Below are positions 24,367 to 35,880 of a stretch of DNA of 64,000 nucleotides, one piece after another. A model generated the notes under the pieces. The model ran no database searches. It was not told the origin of the DNA and worked only from the letters and a program-made list of their open reading frames with translations. Where the stretch lies: positions 124,001 through 188,000 of the IMG/VR virus record IMGVR_UViG_3300009703_004110, one strand, 5' to 3'. Position numbers and translations under genes: made by a program. How positions within the stretch are numbered: the stretch's first letter is position 1; every line of letters begins with the position of its first letter.

Positions 24367-26355
24367 TTATATTGTCCAACCAAATGTATAGACTATATCA
24401 GTTTTGTCAAGTCTTTTAAGCTCGATTCTTTGCCTTGTAAAGTGTCTAAAGACTATCTTCTCTCTACTGACTTTTAGCACTTCATAAATATATTCCTGAT
24501 CGTCTGTAAAATCAAATCTAACAATTAAGTCTCTATCTTTAATTGCCGGGATTGGCACAGTCCAAGCTGATGGTTCAAAATCTTGCTCCAAATGCTCTGC
24601 AGCACCTAGCTTTAAGTCTTCAACTGCATCTGCAAAGGAAATAATAACTCGCTTATCCTCTCGTCTGAGATTTGAATATTGACTATATCCACCAACATAT
24701 CCTGTGCCAAAGCACTCCTTACAGCTTTTAACCTTTGGATGCATTCTCCTTGAACCCATGCAGCTACAGATTTGGCCATCCCAAATTCTTCTAAGTAGAA
24801 CAATAGGTTCACCAACCTGGTCCAGAAGCACCTCTTCTCTGCCAATAAGCCTATCCCAAAGATTAAATCCTCTAAACCCATTATACTCACCACCAAGATA
24901 AGTTCCACAGTCATCTACGCCATTTAATGTATGTTGAGGAAGCGGCCTGTGATATCCACAAAAATCATAGCCCTGAAAGAACTTCTGATCATTATCACCA
25001 TAGTCTGTAACAACTAGTCCGGTATTATCGACTTCACGCTGAAGATCATATCCGTCATGGAAAGTTGGCGTAGCCATAATAATAACAGTATTTTGATCTC
25101 TGCAGTTAGTAAAAAACTTTACTTCGTCTCCAACGACATAGACACCAGCGGTAGTGCCTAATAAACCTCTGCCACCAGAAGGCACTAAGAACGAAGAGTT
25201 CTCTTCTGAAACTGAGTTATATCCTATAATCTCTGTTCCAATTATCAGGTTTCCTTTGGCTCCAAATCCATCTACTGAATCAACATAGATAACCGAATCT
25301 GTATCAAAAATTGATTGTGATACTGCTGTTGCAGACGGGAACTCCCAAAATCCATCAGAAATCTCCACCATCCCGGTAAAGTCTAATGCATCCTTATGGG
25401 TCTCCATAGCTCTTGCCGCAAAAGACAAAGTTAGGCCTGGGGTTAAGCCGGTAATAGTAGCCGATAGTATATCTGCTCTGGCTATATAAGACGGCTCAGA
25501 ATCAAAAATATCAAGCCTCTTCTCGTTCATATAAATCAAAACATAGACATCGCTCTTATACGCTCTTTTGGCTGGTACGTTCCATTCCAAAAGAAGGGAG
25601 TCACCAGAGCCGCAACTTGAAACTTTTTGCATTCCCTGAAAGAATCCAACGAATCCTGTTTGTGGAAAAACTTCGGGAAGTGTAGCGACCCTCTGCTTAA
25701 CAGTAAAGGGGATCTCGCCAGTAGCTTTGCCGCCATTCTCATCGGAAACGGCCCAGTTGATTTTATAATCACCATTCTTAAGAGGCTCATCCGGATCGAT
25801 CTTGACTACTACGGTATCGCTGTCTTCAAAGATTCCTGATTCAGCTCCGTTAGGGCTGCTTTCGAATGCTCCATTAACAACATAATCTAGGCCGCCTATG
25901 CTAATTTGAATTGAACTTAAGTCAATATCATCCAGCAAGTCCTCAAACTCTAATGTAATTAATTGGGGATTTACAATGACGCCGTTCGCTACAGGATTTG
26001 ACTCAACTAGTACCGGCTCTTCTAAGATAGCTCTATAGACATAAGTACGATTAAAATATCCACCGTCCATATCTTGAACTTGGATTTTTATAAATACTTG
26101 GGTACCCTTTGGAAAGTCTGACTCTGGATCGATTACAACATTGAAATTTTCGCCATCCTGATTTATCTCAGAGTTAAGGCCGTCAAAGCCGGTTTTAAAG
26201 TCTACTCCAACCACCGCCCGGTTGCCACGCACCTCCACAATAAGCGTAGATATATCTATGCCCGTGCCGTCGTCCAGTATGGTAAACTCTATATCGGCAT
26301 CAAGTGCGACTTGTTTTTCGCCCTCTGATGGTGATAATCCTGATATTGAAAACAT
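24367..26355 (-). CDS. Neck/head-closure protein with N-terminal Ig-like/FN3 domains
   Basis: Ig-like repeats (SPSEGEKQVALDADIEFTI; SNPVANG) and FN3-like ITGLTPGLTLSFAARA. C-terminal GEPIVLLRR...CSC...CKECFGTGYVGGY...IKDRDLIV is a head-closure pattern. Confidence 0.55.
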   Translation of the reverse strand: MFSISGLSPSEGEKQVALDADIEFTILDDGTGIDISTLIVEVRGNRAVVGVDFKTGFDGLNSEINQDGENFNVVIDPESDFPKGTQVFIKIQVQDMDGGYFNRTYVYRAILEEPVLVESNPVANGVIVNPQLITLEFEDLLDDIDLSSIQISIGGLDYVVNGAFESSPNGAESGIFEDSDTVVVKIDPDEPLKNGDYKINWAVSDENGGKATGEIPFTVKQRVATLPEVFPQTGFVGFFQGMQKVSSCGSGDSLLLEWNVPAKRAYKSDVYVLIYMNEKRLDIFDSEPSYIARADILSATITGLTPGLTLSFAARAMETHKDALDFTGMVEISDGFWEFPSATAVSQSIFDTDSVIYVDSVDGFGAKGNLIIGTEIIGYNSVSEENSSFLVPSGGRGLLGTTAGVYVVGDEVKFFTNCRDQNTVIIMATPTFHDGYDLQREVDNTGLVVTDYGDNDQKFFQGYDFCGYHRPLPQHTLNGVDDCGTYLGGEYNGFRGFNLWDRLIGREEVLLDQVGEPIVLLRRIWDGQICSCMGSRRMHPKVKSCKECFGTGYVGGYSQYSNLRREDKRVIISFADAVEDLKLGAAEHLEQDFEPSAWTVPIPAIKDRDLIVRFDFTDDQEYIYEVLKVSREKIVFRHFTRQRIELKRLDKTDIVYTFGWTI

Positions 26356-28853: not shown

Positions 28854-29312
28854 TTACTTTTTACGATGAGCGGCACACAAAGTGCCCTTTTTCGGAGCTT
28901 GACGTTTACATCGCTGACCATTAGTCTTTACAAATAAACATCTTTTAAACTCAGGAGGCGCCTTAACCTCTTCATAATCTTCCATTACAACCGGATTAAA
29001 CTTTGGTTCAGACTCTTCCTCCATCACTATAAATCCATGAGATTCGTCCTTTTTCTCTGTAATGTTTGTAACATCACCTGAGGTAGTAGTACCATAAATT
29101 GCGGCGCGCCTCTCCTGCTCGTTGGAGGCCTCTAACTCATCTAAATCTTTTTGAAACTCAAAGAAGCTTTCATACGCCACATCATATTCATCTGCATCAT
29201 CTGGAACATGGTGCTCTCCACGTCGTCCAATATCATGAGGAGATGGGGCTTTACGAATTGGCGTACCTTTAATTAGATGACTTCTTTTCTTCAGCTTGCT
29301 CTTTAGCATCAT
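28854..29312 (-). CDS. Hypothetical protein with C-terminal C3H Zn-finger
   Basis: RCLFVKTNGQRCKRQAPKKGTLCAAH. Start moved to 29312, which follows a GAGGAGG RBS. Confidence 0.6.
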   Translation of the reverse strand: MMLKSKLKKRSHLIKGTPIRKAPSPHDIGRRGEHHVPDDADEYDVAYESFFEFQKDLDELEASNEQERRAAIYGTTTSGDVTNITEKKDESHGFIVMEEESEPKFNPVVMEDYEEVKAPPEFKRCLFVKTNGQRCKRQAPKKGTLCAAHRKK

Positions 29313-29922
29313 CTTCCTCCTCAAAATACCTTGACAGAATCTCTTCTAAGGCGTCATGGATCTCATCCTCTAAATCCTCTGCCTCTTCTTTGTCTAGCTC
29401 TAGATCGAATGGCAGGTTTACCCTTGCGCCGACTTCATTATCCTTTATGAAGATATTAAAATGAGGGTCCGGAGTTTTGCACTCAGTATCTTCGTCATTA
29501 GTAGTGTGAAGAACTTCCTTCATCTGTTCGGCCATGTCATGAACCCTGTCAGATGCGTCGGGAAGCTCTAAAAGTTTAAGAGCAATCGCGAGTTTGGTAA
29601 GGTCACTAAAGAGAGAAGACTTCTTTTTCTTCTTCTTCTTCTTCTTTTTATCTTTCCACTTGACCTTCTTTTCCCACTTCTTAACTTTCTTTTTTGTTTC
29701 CTCTTTGTCAGTGGAAACGTGAGATTCTTCTAGATTTTTGTTTTGGTTCAATACGCCCCATGCCTTTGCATAAGCTCTCGCATCGCTTTCGCCAGCATCC
29801 TTAGCGCCCTCAAAGACAGCCATAAATTGGCGGTACTCTTTGGCGCCAGCACCTGGATGACGCTTCTTGACTTTCTTTTTAATATCAGCAGGAACTGATT
29901 TTTTCTTTGCCGTAATCAGCAT
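29269..29922 (-). CDS. ChaB-like protein with poly-Lys tract and acidic C-terminus
   Basis: VPADIKKKV...RQFMAVFEGAKDAGESDARAYAKAWGVL matches the ChaB pattern. A run of ten Lys follows. Confidence 0.6.
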   Translation of the reverse strand: MLITAKKKSVPADIKKKVKKRHPGAGAKEYRQFMAVFEGAKDAGESDARAYAKAWGVLNQNKNLEESHVSTDKEETKKKVKKWEKKVKWKDKKKKKKKKKKSSLFSDLTKLAIALKLLELPDASDRVHDMAEQMKEVLHTTNDEDTECKTPDPHFNIFIKDNEVGARVNLPFDLELDKEEAEDLEDEIHDALEEILSRYFEEEDDAKEQAEEKKSSN

Positions 29923-29935
29923 CTTAAAACTCCAT

Positions 29936-29970
29936 TAAAAAAGCCGCAGATCTAATGGGATCTGCAGCTT
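29936..29970 (-). terminator. Intrinsic terminator closing the accessory island
   Basis: RNA AAGCUGCAGAUC-loop-GAUCUGCGGCUU plus U-run. The G-U pair favours the minus orientation. Confidence 0.7.
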
Positions 29971-30072
29971 TAAGACTTTCCCATCTAATTAGGAGCGTCA
30001 ATATTAATATAGTTTAATCACATATGCGCGCGCGCGGCTCTAACTACATTATCTAGTTCAATTTTTTTCCAT

Positions 30073-30174
30073 TTATTCCTCGCATTCACACCTGACGCAA
30101 TCACAGCAGCTAGTAACACAAACGCACTCTCTGCAGATTGCACATAGCTCGCAACATTCACATTTATTTTCCAT
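30073..30174 (-). CDS. 33-aa Cys-rich metallothionein-like peptide
   Basis: AGGAGG RBS 5 nt before ATG. Reads MENKCECCELCAICRECVCVTSCCDCVRCECEE (12 Cys). Confidence 0.7.
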   Translation of the reverse strand: MENKCECCELCAICRECVCVTSCCDCVRCECEE

Positions 30175-30201
30175 AATAACCTCCTATAAAGTAGCTAATT
30201 A

Positions 30202-30570
30202 TTAGTTGGTTATATTCATCTTCGATATGCCTTTTGGATTCATAACGCCTATGCCAATTTTTTCAGTTACAGACCATGAAAGTCCCGTCCTTGGTAATAA
30301 AGCAGGAAAAGAATCAAAGTTATATACGCACCATTCCTTTAAAACATCTGGAAGATCATCAAATATCTCCTCCAGAGGGCATGGTGTTGATGTGGCAATA
30401 AGCTTTCCATTACGAATACTTTTCTGCTGTTTAATTTTATAACAATTAACTTTATAATCATATATTCCATAGTATACGAATTCAAATTCGCCATTAGAAA
30501 ATTTACCACTACTAACTTCTTTAAAGCCAGCAGCTTTCAATATTCTTTCAAATTCATTACAGTCTTCCAT
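30202..30570 (-). CDS. Array protein with shared motif (DLPDVLKEWCVYNFDSF) and C-terminal extension
   Basis: Variant of the shared motif; TAATG-coupled to the upstream gene. Confidence 0.65.
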   Translation of the reverse strand: MEDCNEFERILKAAGFKEVSSGKFSNGEFEFVYYGIYDYKVNCYKIKQQKSIRNGKLIATSTPCPLEEIFDDLPDVLKEWCVYNFDSFPALLPRTGLSWSVTEKIGIGVMNPKGISKMNITN

Positions 30571-30953
30571 TAGGCAAACCTCAATCTTTCGTATTCTGCT
30601 TTCTCTGTGGCATTAGCACGTTTTGCCTCAGCAGCATTAACAAGTCTTTTACGTTCTCTAGCAAGGTCCTGCATGTTAAATAATGTTGTATCTCTTATTT
30701 CATATACAGTTAATTGGTCATATGCGTGTTCGTTATAACTCTCAGGTAAGTGTCCGGCATATTTGCTATCCCAATACATTTCCTCATAATCGTCATCATT
30801 ATAGTCAAGATCGTTAACAAATAAAAGTTCTTTTTTAATTCTTGCAACAAGCTCCTCCATCGAATCAGCATATTCTGTCCAGGTTTTTACTCCGCAGCCA
30901 ATAGTGTAATCACATCCGCTGCCTTGCTCGGCTATAACTAAAAAGGTCTTCAT
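30570..30953 (-). CDS. Hypothetical protein in the array, no shared motif
   Basis: 127 aa; contains EQGSGCDYTIGCG. Confidence 0.65.
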   Translation of the reverse strand: MKTFLVIAEQGSGCDYTIGCGVKTWTEYADSMEELVARIKKELLFVNDLDYNDDDYEEMYWDSKYAGHLPESYNEHAYDQLTVYEIRDTTLFNMQDLARERKRLVNAAEAKRANATEKAEYERLRFA

Positions 30954-31240
30954 AATCTTATCTCTCCTTTACTTGTAGATACAAACATATCTAGATTACA
31001 TAATACAAATATCGCCTGATCTCTTCCAAGTTCCATTAGAAAATCATCAAGCTCAGTCTCTCCTATATCCTTAGGGTCAAGTCTACGTCGTTTATAAACC
31101 AATAGTTTATACCCATCGCTTACCATTTTTGGAACAAATCGCCACTTAAACTTATCTTTTCCAAGCTCTCGAAACAGCTCATCTTTAAAGCCTTGGCATT
31201 CAAATAAGGTCATTAAATGGCTCCATATCATTATGGTCAA
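30950..31240 (-). CDS. Array protein with shared motif (ELGRDQAIFVLCNLDMF)
   Basis: Motif near the C-terminus; start uncertain. Confidence 0.6.
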   Translation of the reverse strand: MTIMIWSHLMTLFECQGFKDELFRELGKDKFKWRFVPKMVSDGYKLLVYKRRRLDPKDIGETELDDFLMELGRDQAIFVLCNLDMFVSTSKGEIRL

Positions 31241-31448
31241 ACATATCTAAATTATTAATCAAAATATCTTTAATCGAAACTGATAAATAATCATCATTTA
31301 ACATAGCTTCCAATAACATCTTGGTACTATTTGGGCTAGACCAGCATATTATTTGAACCTTGCTACCTATTTGCCCCATAAACATTTTTCGTCTAGCCAG
31401 GTAATCGTCTAATCCAAGCTTATTCATTTCTGATATTATTTTCATCAA
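31200..31448 (-). CDS. Array protein with shared motif (YLSVSIKDILINNLDMF)
   Basis: Motif near the C-terminus. Confidence 0.6.
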   Translation of the reverse strand: MMKIISEMNKLGLDDYLARRKMFMGQIGSKVQIICWSSPNSTKMLLEAMLNDDYLSVSIKDILINNLDMFDHNDMEPFNDLI

Positions 31449-31816
31449 AATAACTCCGCATTATAAATAATAAAGTCTTGCAACTCTATGGGTAAATCAT
31501 CAATAATCTGGTCAGTGCTTTGATAAATATAGTTACTATCTTTTGGATTCCATCTTGAAAATACGATTGTTTCATCTCTGTGCATAGAGACGCGCAACTC
31601 TTTTTTAAGCTCTGAGTCAGATACATCCAAACGAAAATCTTCAAAGTACTGAAGAGATTTAAAACCGCTTGATATAACTAAGGACCTAAATCTTGCAAAT
31701 TTATCAAACGGCAGTTTATAGCCATTAGAAATAATTAGATTAAGACTAACATAGTCGAGTCTAAAACCTAAGTCTATAGTGCACAAGGAATTATTTAATC
31801 CTCTAATTTTCTTCAT
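31445..31816 (-). CDS. Array protein with shared motif (DLPIELQDFIIYNAELF)
   Basis: Motif at the extreme C-terminus. Confidence 0.7.
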   Translation of the reverse strand: MKKIRGLNNSLCTIDLGFRLDYVSLNLIISNGYKLPFDKFARFRSLVISSGFKSLQYFEDFRLDVSDSELKKELRVSMHRDETIVFSRWNPKDSNYIYQSTDQIIDDLPIELQDFIIYNAELF

Positions 31817-32039
31817 AAATCTCGCGCTCTAATACATCGTTAATTAAAAGCTCAAGAGGACGCCTTATATACTCAGGCGGCTGTATTCTGGGCGATTGAT
31901 CGCTAGCCCGTATAAATTGGGTCTTACGCATAGAATCTAAACGACATTGCTTAGAGCAGTATGCTAGAGAGCACTCAGTCTTTTTTATATATATAAATGC
32001 TTTGCAGCAATGGGTACACATGGTTTTATGGGTTTTCAT
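31803..32039 (-). CDS. Small Zn-finger protein in the array, no shared motif
   Basis: CTHC...YCSKQC. Confidence 0.6.
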   Translation of the reverse strand: MKTHKTMCTHCCKAFIYIKKTECSLAYCSKQCRLDSMRKTQFIRASDQSPRIQPPEYIRRPLELLINDVLEREIYEEN

Positions 32040-32239
32040 ATAAACAGCTCCATATTGTGAATCATATAATTTTGAAACCTTTTTGGTATTCCAGGAAATT
32101 CCAGAATCTTTTCAGCAGAGATCGGATTAAATACATCCGAAATTAAAGACACAAAAATAATCTTTTTTTTGCCATCGACTCTCGCCATTGATATAAAATT
32201 TAGACTCAGCCATTCCGAAAATTCTTCTTCAATATTCAT
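32036..32239 (-). CDS. Array protein with shared motif (GIPKRFQNYMIHNMELFI)
   Basis: Motif at the C-terminus; ATGA overlaps on both sides. Confidence 0.7.
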   Translation of the reverse strand: MNIEEEFSEWLSLNFISMARVDGKKKIIFVSLISDVFNPISAEKILEFPGIPKRFQNYMIHNMELFI

Positions 32240-32532
32240 ATAAATAACCCTATATTATGAATGATGAGATCTTGAACATCAGGCGGAAACTCATTCATAT
32301 GTTCTGACACCTTTCTTAACTCATAATTAAGATAACCATCTATATTATTAGGATCTCTAATTTTATCTATTGATTCGTATACATATAATTTTTCCATACG
32401 AACAGAATAAACGATGCGCATTCTTAAGCCATCATTAAAAAATGCATGATTATGTCGATAGGTCTTTTGTACAAATCCTATCGAATTTAATATTCTTATT
32501 ATAGACGGAGGCACGGCATTTCCATAATTCAT
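32236..32532 (-). CDS. Array protein with shared motif (EFPPDVQDLIIHNIGLFI)
   Basis: Motif at the C-terminus; ATGA overlaps on both sides. Confidence 0.7.
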   Translation of the reverse strand: MNYGNAVPPSIIRILNSIGFVQKTYRHNHAFFNDGLRMRIVYSVRMEKLYVYESIDKIRDPNNIDGYLNYELRKVSEHMNEFPPDVQDLIIHNIGLFI

Positions 32533-32834
32533 ATAAATAACTCCGCATTATAAATCACAAACTCTTGGACCTCTTCTGGCAAAAAAGCAAATAGGTCTCC
32601 GACGCTTTTACCCGGATAAGATTTCACAAATCCGCTACAATCAAGCTTTCCAAATGTAAGCTTAACATGATCGCCGCGCTCACGGAAAGATATTCTAATC
32701 TCCTTTTTAAAGGTATAGTCGTATCTGCTTCCAGAACGTGAACTTATTTCAAATCCTGAGCACATCATGACGCTGTGAAATTCATAAGCGGGAATAGTGG
32801 CGAGAATGTATTCTCCCGGGTATCTTCCTTTCAT
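32529..32834 (-). CDS. Array protein with shared motif (FLPEEVQEFVIYNAELFI)
   Basis: Motif at the C-terminus; ATGA overlaps. Confidence 0.7.
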   Translation of the reverse strand: MKGRYPGEYILATIPAYEFHSVMMCSGFEISSRSGSRYDYTFKKEIRISFRERGDHVKLTFGKLDCSGFVKSYPGKSVGDLFAFLPEEVQEFVIYNAELFI

Positions 32835-33081
32835 ATAAGTAAATCCATATTATGAATCAAAGCATCCTTTACATATTGTGGGAAACGATTGCTTTCAAGG
32901 GCCTCTGATATATATCCCAAGTATAAACATATCTATATCCCGCCTCATCATCGCGACGCTCCTGTATATAGGTGCTTATAAAAAAATCGTCTACATCATT
33001 GCGACCACTATATATGACCATATTATTTTCTTTTAGATATTCACTTATTTCTGGTATATCGATATAATCTCTGACACTCAT
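32831..33081 (-). pseudogene. Frameshifted array gene; motif RFPQYVKDALIHNMDLLI lies in the shifted frame
   Basis: Removing one AT from (AT)4 at 32908-32915 gives ...WDISEALESNRFPQYVKDALIHNMDLLI*, whose stop overlaps the next ATG (ATGA). Confidence 0.7.
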
Positions 33082-33159
33082 AAATTCCGCCTGCCTATCT
33101 AGGCTTTTCTATACAGTACCTGCGCGAACGATGGTGTGCAAATCTAGGAATGGAAAGAT

Positions 33160-33414
33160 TTACACAAACAGTTCCAAATTATGGATAATATAATCCTGGA
33201 TGGTTAACTCAAGATCGTTTAGTTTATCACCTATATCATAAAGAATATACTCCATTCTATCATTGTTCCAGATCCCATAATACCATTTTTTATAAGGATG
33301 ATTGCTCCAGTAATCACATATAATTTTTTCATCGCCATAACAATAGCATCCCTTTTGTCTGGATACAAAACCGCGCTTCTCTAGAAGATCGAAGAATTCA
33401 TTATATTCAATCAT
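33160..33414 (-). CDS. Array protein with shared motif (DLELTIQDYIIHNLELFV)
   Basis: Motif at the C-terminus. Confidence 0.7.
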   Translation of the reverse strand: MIEYNEFFDLLEKRGFVSRQKGCYCYGDEKIICDYWSNHPYKKWYYGIWNNDRMEYILYDIGDKLNDLELTIQDYIIHNLELFV

Positions 33415-33650
33415 ACAAACAACTCCATATTATATATGATATAATCTTTAACTTCTATAGGAAATTGATTAGAATTTAATACATAAGTTATAGAATGCCA
33501 CTCAATATGTTTTCCAGGCCTTTTAATCCCAATAGAATATTTACCATCTTCATCTGCAAAGCTGCTAGTTGCCAAACTACAGTCATACTGTCCAATGAAA
33601 TGACTTATAATTGCATAATAATTATTTGTATTATCATCAGGTATTGACAT
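33411..33650 (-). CDS. Array protein with shared motif (QFPIEVKDYIIYNMELFV)
   Basis: Motif at the C-terminus. Confidence 0.7.
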   Translation of the reverse strand: MSIPDDNTNNYYAIISHFIGQYDCSLATSSFADEDGKYSIGIKRPGKHIEWHSITYVLNSNQFPIEVKDYIIYNMELFV

Positions 33651-33839
33651 TTATTGGCCCTTTATTCTAATAAATAGATCCAAGTTATAAATAATAAAGC
33701 TGCGCGCAGGATCCGGAAGGTCTTCGCATTCTAAGAGTGCTTCGGCAGACCACCAGACTTTCTCGCAATCATCACTCTAAGTAACGTACTCCCATAAGTC
33801 CATATATCCATACACTTCTGTTAACTTTGGTTTATTCAT
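33651..33839 (-). pseudogene. Array gene with in-frame TAG at codon 21 (motif DLPDPARSFIIYNLDLFI)
   Basis: Reads MNKPKLTEVYGYMDLWEYVT*SDDCEKVWWSAEALLECEDLPDPARSFIIYNLDLFIRIKGQ*. TAATG-coupled to the HNH gene. Confidence 0.65.
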
Positions 33840-34708
33840 TACCAGTTATCCTTATTGGCGAGCATTTTTTCTAAATGAGACTTGAGAAAGCAGGCATCGT
33901 GAGCCATCTTTACTCTATTACATACTTCACAACAAGATACTACATTGTCAAGGCTATAGCCTTTGCTAGAGTCAACTCTGTCCACCCCAAGAGTTTCTAT
34001 CTTGTCCCCGCAATAATTACAAGGCTTCTGCCAAAAAGTAGAAAACTGTTCGTCAGTTAGATTCCAAGCAAATCCTCTTTTCTTTGCATTAAACTTATAT
34101 TTAGATAGCTTACCTGCGAGAGTGGCGTTATGTATTTTAGCATAGGCACGCTCCTGCTTTCTGGCTTTTTCTAGATTTTCACTTCGCCACTTATTCTTTG
34201 CAACTCTTCTCTTTTCGCGATATACCTCATCATCTTTATATTTTTCCTTGTGCCATTTGGCCTTGCAGGGTTTGCAAACTACTCCAAATCCATCATCCCT
34301 TGACTTATCCTTATAAAAGTCATCAACTGATAACGTTAGCTTACAATGCGAGCATCGTTTTTCTATTTTATCTGAAAATATACCACTTGCTGCATTTTTC
34401 TTTCTCTTTTTAATACGACAAAGTTTGCACACATTCTCCCTACCATCCGCAAGAAGCTTTGATTTATTAAAGCTATCCATAGGTAATAATTCCGAACAAG
34501 CTTTGCAGGTCTTTTCTATTCTATCTATATCATATTTAATTCTTGGAACCGGCACTCTTTTGGCATTTTTTACTTTACTAGTACAGGTTCTGCACCTATT
34601 AGAATATCCATCTTTAGTTGCCTTATTTAAACTATATGCCTCATATGGCATAGGATCTTTACAGTAGTTACAAGTCTTCATCCCTCCTCCATACATATAT
34701 TTTACCAT
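33839..34708 (-). CDS. HNH-type homing endonuclease-like protein with three N-terminal CxxC Zn-finger repeats
   Basis: KTCNYC...CRTC, KTCKAC...CKLC, KRCSHC...CKPC, then PCNYCG...GVDRVDSSKGYSLDNVVSCCEVCNRVK. The start may be 34681. Confidence 0.75.
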   Translation of the reverse strand: MVKYMYGGGMKTCNYCKDPMPYEAYSLNKATKDGYSNRCRTCTSKVKNAKRVPVPRIKYDIDRIEKTCKACSELLPMDSFNKSKLLADGRENVCKLCRIKKRKKNAASGIFSDKIEKRCSHCKLTLSVDDFYKDKSRDDGFGVVCKPCKAKWHKEKYKDDEVYREKRRVAKNKWRSENLEKARKQERAYAKIHNATLAGKLSKYKFNAKKRGFAWNLTDEQFSTFWQKPCNYCGDKIETLGVDRVDSSKGYSLDNVVSCCEVCNRVKMAHDACFLKSHLEKMLANKDNW

Positions 34709-34727
34709 CGTGAAGCATCGAAATCAA
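34699..34727 (-). promoter_or_regulatory. Sigma70-like promoter for the HNH gene and the array
   Basis: TTGATT-N17-TAAAAT with an extended -10 TG, just downstream of the capsid-gene terminator. Confidence 0.55.
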
Positions 34728-34800
34728 AAAAATTTGGATTGGGTGTGAAAATTTTATTTCTTAGTGACGACCCACCCAAGCCAAAGCAGCATCAGAGGCG

Positions 34801-34834
34801 AAAAAAAATCCCTGTCTCCGAAGAGTCAGGGATT
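34801..34834 (-). terminator. Intrinsic terminator after the major capsid gene
   Basis: AUCCCUGACUC-UUCG-GAGACAGGGAU followed by a U-run; C(UUCG)G tetraloop. Confidence 0.85.
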
Positions 34835-34866
34835 AATTATACGGAATCCTCAATGAGGACTAGGGT

Positions 34867-35880
34867 TTAGTCAGTGACAAAGCCACTGCCGACACCTCGG
34901 GGGTTTACAATCCCAATTCCGATTATTTCGCTGACTACCCAGCCAAGCTTCAACTGCTTAGGCTCGTCAGCAGGCAGTACCTCGATGTCCTGACGGACAG
35001 GCATTACACCTACGAACTCTGGATCCGCTACTGCGAAGACCTGCTTGTTAGTAACAACCTTGGAGACGATGATATCAGCACCGAAGATTGAACCATAAAG
35101 TCCAGTCTGTAGTAGTTCACGCTGAGTCACAGGATCGACCTGAGACGCACCACCGGCACCAGCAGACTCCCAATTAAGGATGTCAGTGAATTCATTGATG
35201 TGCATGAAGTACTTAGCAGTCACGAGGTCCCAACGATCGACCTGACGCTTTAGGTTTAGAAGACCGACCTTAGCCAGTTCATCAGTGGTAGTACCGTTGT
35301 CCAATGTCTGCAACTGGTTCTCACCACCTGCGTTGTTGTCACCGGCGAAATCAAGAGCGGCGAATACGTTAGCATCCTCCTGCGCCTGGATTTCCTGACG
35401 GGCCTTTTGCTGAGCACGATCGATTACATTGAATCTACGCCTCTTGACTTCAGCAATACGGACGGTTGGGTTTGAAACTACTTCAAACTCTGGGATGGTT
35501 ACTCTGTCACCGAAGACACGGGACTCAGGCGCGGTACCATTGCTAGATATAACAACAGCTCCTACGTCGATATCACGGTCGTAGACAGGTAGAGCACCTT
35601 GTGGAAGTGGATCGACTACGAGAGCCTTTCTACCTACACCTTGGTAATCAAGGTTCCTACGAATAGGATTAGCCATAGCTTGACCGAGGGCAGTCTTACC
35701 TTCTTGAGTCATAAGAGCCTGCTTGATCATTTCGTCTCTCTGCTCTTCATTTAATGAAGAACCCTGAGATAGAGCTGAGCTAGAAGGTGCCAATTCTTCA
35801 ATGATGGAAGCGTATCTAACAATCTGCGCTAGAGCATCTTTTACGTTGCCGGCGTTTAATTCGCCTTGTGTATTAAACAT
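34867..35880 (-). CDS. Major capsid protein (HK97 fold, compact encapsulin-like type)
   Basis: PIRRNLDYQGVGRKALVVDPLP, FEVVSNPTVRIAEV, AQEDANVF, GLYGSIFGADIIVS, IGIGIVNPRGV. Follows scaffold and decoration genes and ends at a strong terminator. Confidence 0.85.
   Translation of the reverse strand: MFNTQGELNAGNVKDALAQIVRYASIIEELAPSSSALSQGSSLNEEQRDEMIKQALMTQEGKTALGQAMANPIRRNLDYQGVGRKALVVDPLPQGALPVYDRDIDVGAVVISSNGTAPESRVFGDRVTIPEFEVVSNPTVRIAEVKRRRFNVIDRAQQKARQEIQAQEDANVFAALDFAGDNNAGGENQLQTLDNGTTTDELAKVGLLNLKRQVDRWDLVTAKYFMHINEFTDILNWESAGAGGASQVDPVTQRELLQTGLYGSIFGADIIVSKVVTNKQVFAVADPEFVGVMPVRQDIEVLPADEPKQLKLGWVVSEIIGIGIVNPRGVGSGFVTD

What the first reader, a model, noticed from the sequence alone, without database searches (positions are those of the whole stretch)
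30073..30174. Unannotated phage metallothionein-like micro-protein (12 Cys in 33 aa)
Seen: MENKCECCELCAICRECVCVTSCCDCVRCECEE with a perfect AGGAGG RBS, an upstream ACTAATA motif (30200-30206) and a downstream terminator. It has CxC, CC and CxxC clusters and no aromatic residues. Established: these are metallothionein hallmarks. Inference: Zn/Cu buffering for the many Zn-binding proteins here (TerL, protease, neck, M15), redox protection, or a modified-peptide precursor. I know of few phage examples.
Basis: partly seen in the sequence, partly recalled or inferred. Interest (0 to 1): 0.7.

Follow-up and report, generated by a model that had tools for sequence, protein, structure and literature searches.

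The report
Orphan cysteine-packed micro-ORF in jumbo phage
A 33-codon reading frame that is more than one-third cysteine really exists in this 332-kb phage genome and looks translated. It occurs in no related phage or database, so a metal-binding, metallothionein-like role is plausible chemistry but not an established function.

Summary
Window 30073-30174 (-) encodes MENKCECCELCAICRECVCVTSCCDCVRCECEE, with AGGAGG 5 nt before the ATG.

It is not chance:
- It is the extreme cysteine outlier of the genome, 12 Cys against a next best of 8 among 8,933 frames.
- All 12 TGY codons lie in one frame.
- There is no DNA tandem repeat.
- AGGAGG-N4-9-ATG marks a substantial ORF at 10 of the 11 other sites on the coding strand.

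Public gene calls hold an overlapping 47-aa GTG ORF instead. That frame cannot explain the cysteine frame (P about 3e-9).

The ORF is an orphan. I found no homologue in 1.84 billion representative proteins, in phage records, or in the genomes of five relatives. Closer relatives, reached through the downstream gene, carry an unrelated 130-aa gene in the same slot. The terminator belongs to a conserved intergenic block and is not specific to this ORF.

The ORF matches no metallothionein family by sequence. The phage encodes no radical SAM, MNIO or YcaO maturase.

Best reading (about 0.4): a lineage-specific, translated micro-protein that binds soft metals through thiolate clusters. Rivals are a non-functional recent acquisition, a cysteine-sensing regulatory short ORF, and the 47-aa frame. 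There are no expression data. Interest is moderate to low.

The parts
30073..30174 (-). Cys33 micro-ORF (33 codons plus stop; 12 Cys, 8 acidic residues, net charge about -5)
   Evidence: It is the genome-wide Cys outlier. All 12 TGY codons are in one frame. Its synonymous-codon score is 3.36, against 4.4 +/- 3.8 for real genes and -3.2 +/- 4.9 for off-frame windows.
30180..30185 (-). Shine-Dalgarno AGGAGG, 5 nt upstream of the ATG
   Evidence: There are 12 AGGAGG-N4-9-ATG sites on the coding strand of the genome. Of the other 11, 10 open ORFs of 64 aa or more.
30018..30161 (-). Overlapping 47-aa GTG ORF (alt47) in the +1 frame. This is the one public gene callers annotated.
   Evidence: It has no RBS at functional spacing, because AGGAGG lies 18 nt upstream. 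It has no homologue. Its Val/Ala-rich look is a by-product of TGY-G codons in the Cys frame.
30026..30201 (-). Unique segment of about 176 nt that replaces the 130-aa gene found in this slot in relatives. It ends in a (CG)5 run at 30027-30036.
   Evidence: There is no DNA or protein similarity to relatives or to the rest of the genome. (CG)5 occurs only twice in 332 kb.
29923..30025 (-). Conserved intergenic block shared with relatives: ATATTAATA, a small CUCCU hairpin, the terminator, and the SD of the next gene
   Evidence: It aligns with L316:5900-6003 and L323:805-903.
29937..29971 (-). Intrinsic terminator (13-bp stem, 6-nt loop, U-run)
   Evidence: -19.4 kcal/mol. Relatives that lack Cys33 have terminators at the same position.
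30202..30570 (-). Upstream gene g122, the last member of a tandem array of small paralogues, with a tail resembling the C-terminus of the major capsid protein. Its stop lies 27 nt before the Cys33 ATG.
29269..29922 (-). Downstream gene g217 (highly charged, with a poly-Lys tract). It is the syntenic anchor used to reach closer relatives.

Best explanation
Cys33 is a genuine, lineage-specific protein-coding micro-gene. It was acquired by non-homologous replacement in a variable slot of the head-gene region of a 332-kb jumbo phage. It is co-transcribed with the upstream array of small genes and translated from its own strong Shine-Dalgarno site.

The product is a 33-residue, strongly acidic peptide with 12 thiols. 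It would act as a metallothionein-like metal-thiolate binder in the infected cell.

Shown:
- The ORF and its start signal exist.
- The cysteine content is extreme and frame-specific.
- The ORF is absent from relatives.

Inferred:
- That it is translated.
- That it binds metal. By analogy with the roughly 11-Cys/4-M(II) domain of mammalian metallothionein and the roughly 10-Cys Cu(I) cluster of yeast Cup1 (my own knowledge, not tested here), 12 Cys could hold about four Zn(II)/Cd(II) or six to eight Cu(I). Alternatively it could ligate Fe-S clusters.
- That such binding is its selected function.
For: - Start site: AGGAGG-5 nt-ATG. This motif precedes an ORF of 64 aa or more at 10 of the 11 other sites on the coding strand.
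- Frame-specific cysteine: 12 in-frame TGY against 0 and 2 in the other frames. It is the genome-wide outlier, 12 against a next best of 8 among 8,933 frames.
- Not a DNA repeat.
- Not a by-product of the overlapping annotated frame:
  - TGY occurs at 4.75% per codon in the -1 frame of real genes, so P(12 or more of 29) is 3e-9.
  - 12 of the 13 Val/Ala codons of alt47 inside the overlap follow a T-ending codon, against a 36% background. Only 1 of 5 do so outside the overlap.
- Synonymous codon choice resembles real genes (3.36, against 4.4 +/- 3.8 for real genes and -3.2 +/- 4.9 off-frame).
- It fills an unusually large gap in a 94%-coding genome.
- It lies on the coding strand between genes and upstream of the operon terminator.
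- Composition meets the descriptive metallothionein criteria (read directly from the sequence).
- Cys/acid-rich segments occur in real proteins of related jumbo phages and in actinobacterial DUF5685 proteins, so such sequences can be expressed.
Against: - No homologue was found:
  - phage records (with the low-complexity filter on);
  - 1.84 billion representative proteins;
  - the genomes of five relatives, three of them near-complete;
  - cysteine-skeleton and back-translated patterns in viral, metagenome and genome collections, which returned only simple repeats, unrelated proteins, or the source contig itself.
- Seven related contigs with the same flanking genes lack the ORF. Six carry a 130-aa gene in the slot and the Tara contig a 146-aa one.
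- No Pfam, PHROG or PDB match.
- No RNA or second-strain data.
- The generic codon model prefers the other frame by about 14 bits, and gene callers chose that frame.
- The AlphaFold2 model has low confidence (pLDDT 66).
- The peptide is much more acidic and hydrophobic than classical metallothioneins.
- Metal binding is untested.
Confidence: 0.4

Rival explanations
1. Non-functional passenger. The roughly 176-nt segment is a recently acquired fragment from an unknown source, possibly a piece of a Cys-rich coding sequence. It happens to retain an SD and an open frame. It may or may not be translated, and it confers nothing on the phage.
For: It is a singleton, absent from every relative and database searched. 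It lies in a hypervariable slot where relatives carry different genes. The junction is marked by a rare (CG)5 run. There is no variation or expression data.
Against: An intact perfect SD, an ATG and a 33-codon open frame with 12 phased Cys codons are unlikely to persist, or to arise, without selection. The genome is 94% coding with a median gap of 9 nt, so it carries little junk.
Confidence: 0.27
2. Cysteine-sensing regulatory short ORF. Ribosomes pausing on the 12 Cys codons when Cys-tRNA is scarce would alter RNA folding. This would change read-through of the downstream terminator or access to the downstream SD. Polycysteine short ORFs act in this way in mycobacteria.
For: There is a precedent for Cys-rich short ORFs acting as attenuators (bioRxiv 10.1101/834739). 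The ORF has two CC pairs and 12 Cys codons and sits 82 nt upstream of a strong terminator. ORF codons 13-15 (AUCUGCAG) and the 5' arm of the terminator can form an 8-bp duplex of -12.7 kcal/mol.
Against: The terminator and intergenic block are ancestral and occur in relatives that have no Cys ORF. The candidate antiterminator is weak beside the -19.4 kcal/mol terminator and lies about 150 nt away. The downstream genes have no link to cysteine metabolism. The Cys codons are dispersed rather than forming a terminal run.
Confidence: 0.07
3. The real gene is the overlapping 47-aa GTG ORF (30018-30161), a small hydrophobic peptide. On this reading the cysteine frame is an accident of its sequence.
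For: It was called by the JGI and Logan/ENA gene finders. It has a better generic codon score in its own frame. Its stop codon aligns with the stop of the 130-aa gene of relatives. It has a hydrophobic core, AFVLLAAVIASGV.
Against: It has a GTG start with no SD at functional distance. It has no homologue. Its Val/Ala richness is what the +1 frame of TGY-G codons must give. 12 of its 13 Val/Ala codons in the overlap follow a T-ending codon, and P(12 or more TGY in the -1 frame) is 3e-9. Its similarity to the 130-aa protein is not significant (p = 0.2).
Confidence: 0.08
4. Precursor of a ribosomally synthesised, post-translationally modified peptide, or a disulfide-rich exported peptide.
For: It is a Cys-dense short peptide.
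Against: Only four residues precede the first Cys, so there is no leader or signal peptide. The 332-kb genome has no radical SAM, MNIO/DUF692 or YcaO gene, and the control genomes did give matches. The neighbouring genes have no enzyme domains.
Confidence: 0.04

Closest known systems
Metallothioneins as a descriptive class (for example the mammalian MT domains, yeast Cup1 and Neurospora Cu-MT; recalled from my own knowledge)
   Same: Very small size, about one-third cysteine, CxC/CC/CxxC motifs, and no aromatic residues or histidine. The expected chemistry is metal-thiolate clusters.
   Different: No sequence match to any Pfam metallothionein family or PDB chain. The peptide is strongly acidic (8 D/E against 3 K/R) and relatively hydrophobic (V, I, L, A) rather than Ser/Lys/Gly-rich. 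It is phage-borne and a singleton. Metal binding is untested.
Bacterial metallothioneins SmtA/BmtA (Pfam PF02069) and MymT
   Same: They are prokaryotic small Cys-rich metal binders.
   Different: They are longer (about 53-56 aa), and SmtA uses His ligands and contains aromatic residues (my own knowledge). There is no profile match here.
Polycysteine leaderless short ORFs of mycobacteria (Cys-responsive attenuators; bioRxiv 10.1101/834739)
   Same: A short unannotated ORF dense in Cys codons, upstream of other genes on the same strand.
   Different: Those have consecutive Cys runs at the 3' end that pair with the downstream SD, and they precede cysteine-metabolism operons. Here the Cys codons are dispersed, there is an SD-led start, the alternative pairing is weak, and the downstream genes are phage genes of unknown function.
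Cys/Asp/Glu-rich tails of larger proteins: actinobacterial DUF5685 proteins (...CDCCDGCDCCDC) and a DUF1281_C protein of a related jumbo phage (...CECVRCVHC...CECE)
   Same: The same style of alternating Cys and acidic residues. One related phage shares the hexapeptide C[DE]CVRC.
   Different: Those are C-terminal tails of proteins of 220-490 aa with unknown function. No significant alignment to Cys33, and no homologue of the DUF1281_C protein in this genome.

Membership tests
Metallothionein (descriptive class) | Low molecular mass (below about 10 kDa) and very high cysteine content | tested here: met
   33 aa with 12 Cys, which is 36%. Long ORFs of this genome average 0.97% Cys.
Metallothionein (descriptive class) | Cys arranged in CxC, CC and CxxC motifs, with no or few aromatic residues and His | tested here: met
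   Read from the sequence: CxC four times, CC twice, a CxxC series at positions 8-11-14-17 and 23-26-29, and no F, W, Y or H.
Metallothionein (descriptive class) | Binds metal ions in metal-thiolate clusters | not testable with these tools
   The complex-prediction job with Zn was not folded and gives no evidence. ICP-MS or ESI-MS on the peptide is needed.
Curated metallothionein sequence families (Pfam Metallothio*, PF02069 and others) | Significant profile or sequence match | tested here: not met
   0 Pfam families at E up to 1, 0 PDB chains at E up to 10, and 0 hits among 1.84 billion representatives.
Cys-responsive attenuator short ORF | Consecutive Cys codons in a translated short ORF upstream of the regulated genes | tested here: inconclusive
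   Two CC pairs and 12 dispersed Cys codons. Translation is inferred only.
Cys-responsive attenuator short ORF | An alternative RNA pairing that links ribosome position to the terminator or the downstream SD | tested here: inconclusive
   Only an 8-bp duplex of -12.7 kcal/mol, against a -19.4 kcal/mol terminator. The terminator is conserved in relatives that lack the short ORF.
Cys-responsive attenuator short ORF | Downstream genes involved in cysteine or sulfur metabolism | tested here: not met
   g217, g156 and the 307-aa gene have no Pfam or PHROG function, and the 74-aa gene matches only DUF5659. None is linked to sulfur metabolism.
RiPP precursor | A leader region plus a cognate maturase (radical SAM, MNIO or YcaO) encoded nearby | tested here: not met
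   Only four residues precede the first Cys. There are no PF04055, PF05114 or PF02624 matches in the 332-kb genome, and the control genomes did give matches.
Ferredoxin-type 4Fe-4S binding motif | CxxCxxCxxxCP motif and a Fer4 profile match | tested here: not met
   The sequence has CxxCxxCxxC without Pro, and there is no Pfam match. Fe-S ligation as chemistry is not excluded.

The most novel reading that the evidence does not exclude
This would be the first phage-encoded metallothionein-like micro-protein. On this reading it is a 33-residue, 12-thiol acidic peptide expressed during infection by a jumbo phage from a subsurface metagenome, and it sequesters or buffers Zn, Cu, Cd or Fe-S, or cellular redox equivalents, to the phage's benefit. 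It would have been acquired de novo in a variable slot and missed by gene callers, which pick the overlapping frame.
Probability: 0.3. Interest if true: 0.6.

Novelty: new variant of a known kind. Interest (0 to 1): 0.35.

Why it matters
If the peptide is made and binds metal, it would add metal or redox buffering by a micro-protein to the list of phage accessory functions. I found no paper describing a phage or viral metallothionein.

It would also be a concrete case where standard gene finders annotate the wrong overlapping frame, because extreme amino-acid composition defeats generic codon statistics.

Against that, it is a single unconserved ORF in one uncultured phage. Even if true, its biological reach is narrow until relatives or a phenotype are found.

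Tried and rejected
Searches that found no homologue:
- blastn of the 2.5-kb neighbourhood and tblastn of the peptide against 50,697 phage records found nothing. The tblastn low-complexity filter may have masked the query.
- phmmer over 1.84 billion representatives gave 0 hits at E up to 0.001. Power is limited for 33 residues.
- The ESM Atlas feature search gave a best score of 0.78, which is uninformative.
- A seven-Cys skeleton pattern in viral contigs returned only simple-repeat alternative frames.
- The back-translated CECCELCAIC pattern gave 0 hits in viral contigs. In metagenomes it hit only the 100%-identical source contig Ga0114933_10000002.
- The CECCExCxxCxxC-type pattern in 185,579 species genomes returned repeats and DUF5685 tails, not homologues.

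Ideas tested and dropped:
- Sequencing runs: only the probable source DNA sample and a second sample at about 2x that does not cover the ORF. There was no RNA and no variants.
- Rfam found nothing meaningful at this locus.
- I checked whether alt47 or the unique segment derives from the 130-aa gene of relatives. It is not supported (protein p = 0.2, DNA p above 0.8).
- I looked for a donor lineage through the capsid-like tail of g122. There were 0 hits.
- ACTAATA and ATATTAATA are not enriched as promoter motifs.
- Read-through from g122 is excluded. It is in the same frame, but three in-frame stops (TAA, TAA, TAG) intervene.
- Complex prediction with four Zn was not folded and gives no evidence.
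- The AlphaFold2 single-sequence model has low confidence (pLDDT 66), so I did not use it for fold searches.

Full report
**What is there**

Window 30073-30174 on the minus strand is an ATG-initiated 33-codon ORF. It translates to MENKCECCELCAICRECVCVTSCCDCVRCECEE. AGGAGG lies at 30185-30180, 5 nt before the ATG.

The window is bases 124001-188000 of a 332,270-bp IMG/VR virus record. That record is a jumbo phage, estimated 99% complete, cut from the metagenome contig Ga0114933_10000002. The only sequencing runs that hold it are labelled subsurface metagenome. Almost all genes are on the minus strand. The genome is 94% coding and the median intergenic gap is 9 nt. The 279-nt gap that holds the ORF is the 13th largest of 391.

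**Is it more than chance?**

Yes, on several independent counts.

- In a six-frame scan of the whole genome, the largest number of Cys in any 30-residue window is 12, and it is here. The next best is 8, among 8,933 stop-to-stop frames.
- The 102 nt contain 14 TGY triplets. Twelve are in this frame, none in the +1 frame and two in the +2 frame. None of 200,000 composition-preserving shuffles reached 12, and the maximum was 8.
- Tandem Repeats Finder and a shift-autocorrelation test find no DNA-level periodicity. The pattern is therefore codon-level and not a simple repeat. This differs from the Cys-rich frames seen in relatives and in pattern scans, which are alternative frames of trinucleotide repeats.

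**Which overlapping frame is real?**

Public pipelines (JGI/IMG, Logan/ENA) did not call Cys33. They called an overlapping 47-aa GTG ORF at 30018-30161, which I call alt47. A generic codon model trained on this genome's long ORFs also prefers that frame, by about 14 bits. This is because Cys is only 0.97% of normal proteins.

That preference is an artefact of composition. The +1 frame of TGY-G codons must read GYG or GYN, which is Val or Ala. Three results show that alt47 cannot explain the Cys frame:

- Inside the overlap, 12 of the 13 Val/Ala codons of alt47 follow a T-ending codon, against a 36% background. Outside the overlap only 1 of 5 do.
- TGY occurs in the -1 frame of real genes at 4.75% per codon, so 12 or more in 29 codons has P = 3e-9.
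- alt47 has a GTG start, no Shine-Dalgarno at functional distance, and no homologue.

By contrast, AGGAGG-N4-9-ATG occurs at 12 sites on the coding strand. Ten of the other 11 start ORFs of 64 aa or more. Synonymous codon choice in Cys33 scores 3.36. Real genes score 4.4 +/- 3.8 and off-frame windows -3.2 +/- 4.9. I conclude that Cys33 is the frame shaped by selection, or at least the frame that was recently coding.

**Context and evolutionary history**

The major capsid protein is at 34867-35880 and is 83% identical to that of relative L012.

In the more distant relatives found through the 307-aa neighbour, the capsid gene is followed by a terminator and then directly by the homologue of g156. 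In the window, about 5.5 kb (29325-34866) lies between them, in this order:

- an HNH-like ORF (33839-34708);
- a tandem array of small paralogues ending in a ...LPxxVQxxIIHNMELFI motif;
- g122, whose tail resembles the capsid C-terminus;
- Cys33;
- a terminator;
- g217.

A search with g217 found closer relatives at 50-71% identity. Their contigs (L316-L323) show g122-like gene, then a 130-aa gene, then an 89-nt intergenic block, then g217. The intergenic block consists of ATATTAATA, a small CUCCU hairpin, a terminator and the SD of g217. It aligns with window 29923-30025. The roughly 176 nt at 30026-30201 that carry Cys33 have no detectable similarity to the 130-aa gene (DNA p above 0.8), to any frame in relatives, or to the rest of the genome. 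A Tara contig carries yet another gene, of 146 aa, in this slot.

Cys33 is therefore a lineage-specific, non-homologous replacement in a variable slot. The replacement is bounded on the 3' side by a (CG)5 run that occurs only twice in the genome.

**Homology and family tests**

Every search for a relative was negative:

- no Pfam or PHROG family;
- no PDB chain;
- no hit among 1.84 billion representative proteins;
- nothing in phage records;
- nothing in five relatives' genomes by protein search, nor by a composition scan of three complete ones;
- nothing beyond repeats, unrelated proteins and the source contig itself in pattern scans of viral, metagenomic and genomic collections.

The only stylistic look-alikes are Cys/acid-rich parts of larger proteins:

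- a 94-aa protein with an N-terminal Cys-rich part and a C-terminal membrane helix in relative G003;
- a DUF1281_C protein in G004 with a ...CECVRCVHC...CECE tail;
- actinobacterial DUF5685 proteins with (CDCC)n tails.

None of these is demonstrably homologous.

**Mechanism**

If translated, a cytoplasmic peptide with 12 thiols in 33 residues will bind soft metal ions. That follows from general metallothionein chemistry (my own knowledge). The descriptive metallothionein criteria of size, Cys fraction, Cys motifs and absence of aromatic residues and His are all met by the sequence.

Cys residues fall every third position (5, 8, 11, 14, 17 and 23, 26, 29), with extras at 7, 19, 24 and 31. The net charge is about -5. 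Plausible stoichiometries, by analogy with known metallothioneins, are four divalent ions or six to eight Cu(I). Fe-S ligation is also possible. None of this was testable here. The AlphaFold2 model has low confidence, and the Zn complex job was not folded.

**Rivals**

- Modified-peptide precursor. This is disfavoured. There is no leader, and the phage has no radical SAM, MNIO or YcaO gene.
- Cysteine-sensing regulatory short ORF. There is a real precedent in mycobacteria (10.1101/834739). Here the candidate antiterminator is weak, an 8-bp duplex of -12.7 kcal/mol against a -19.4 kcal/mol terminator. The terminator also predates the ORF, and the downstream genes are unrelated to sulfur metabolism.
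- Non-functional passenger. This is the main rival, because conservation and expression evidence are entirely lacking.

**Verdict**

The ORF is very probably the true coding frame at this locus and is missed by standard annotation.

The metallothionein reading is partly supported.

It is best described as an orphan metallothionein-like micro-ORF. My confidence is about 0.4 that it is a translated metal-thiolate binder. Interest is moderate to low until translation and metal binding are shown.

Noticed in passing
window 30202-33081 (-); also L003:2258-2509, L316:4590-5510: A tandem, mostly 4-nt-overlapping array of at least eight small paralogous genes (29-123 aa). They share a C-terminal motif (L/F)Pxx(V/L)Qxx(I/V)I(H/Y)N(M/A)(E/D)LF(I/V). 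The region has low GC (about 0.345). There is no Pfam or PHROG match. Members also occur in related jumbo phages.
   Followed up: partly
window 30202-30310 (-) versus 34867-34975 (-); L316:5148-5510: The last array member, g122, ends in about 35 residues (...LSWSVTEKIGIGVMNPKGISKMNITN) that resemble the C-terminus of the major capsid protein (...LKLGWVVSEIIGIGIVNPRGVGSGFVTD). The same fusion is kept in closer relatives, so it is old and probably functional.
   Followed up: partly
window 33839-34708 (-); L003:567-1982: A Cys-rich HNH-like ORF with repeated CxxC...CxxC modules sits immediately after the capsid gene's terminator, both here and in a 74%-related phage. It looks like a homing-endonuclease insertion at a hot spot. 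There is no Pfam hit at E up to 0.01.
   Followed up: partly
window 29613-29658 (-), inside g217: An (AAG/AAA) run encodes about 11 consecutive lysines. Logan contigs of the source run break exactly there. Relatives have shorter K-runs.
   Followed up: no
window 30027-30036: A (CG)5 run, one of only two in the 332-kb, roughly 40% GC genome. It lies exactly at the junction between the unique Cys33 segment and the conserved intergenic block.
   Followed up: partly
window 24367-26355 (-): A 662-aa protein with a Pfam CopC (copper-binding, Ig-like) domain at residues 115-219 (E = 4.7e-6). It also has weak virion-structural PHROG hits. It is conserved in all relatives. The match may reflect the fold only.
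   Followed up: no
L322:891-1469 (Tara contig): The g217 homologue of a more distant relative has a five-Cys cluster (CTCEPGKCDCKPC). The window's g217 and other homologues have a single Cys (..CKTP..) at that position.
   Followed up: no
L048:6996-7280 (+) and L068:10597-11262 (-): Related jumbo phages encode real proteins with Cys/acid-rich segments. One is a 94-aa protein with 11 Cys at the N-terminus and a C-terminal membrane helix. The other is a DUF1281_C protein with a ...CECVRCVHCDETEDWCECE tail.
   Followed up: partly
L197, L199, L204, L211, L225 and many others (Streptomyces and other Actinobacteria): DUF5685 proteins of about 360-615 aa that end in long (C-D/E-C-C)n tails after a conserved ...EGPWSRxxREGxC motif. 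Their function is unknown. They turned up as by-catch of the Cys-skeleton scan.
   Followed up: partly
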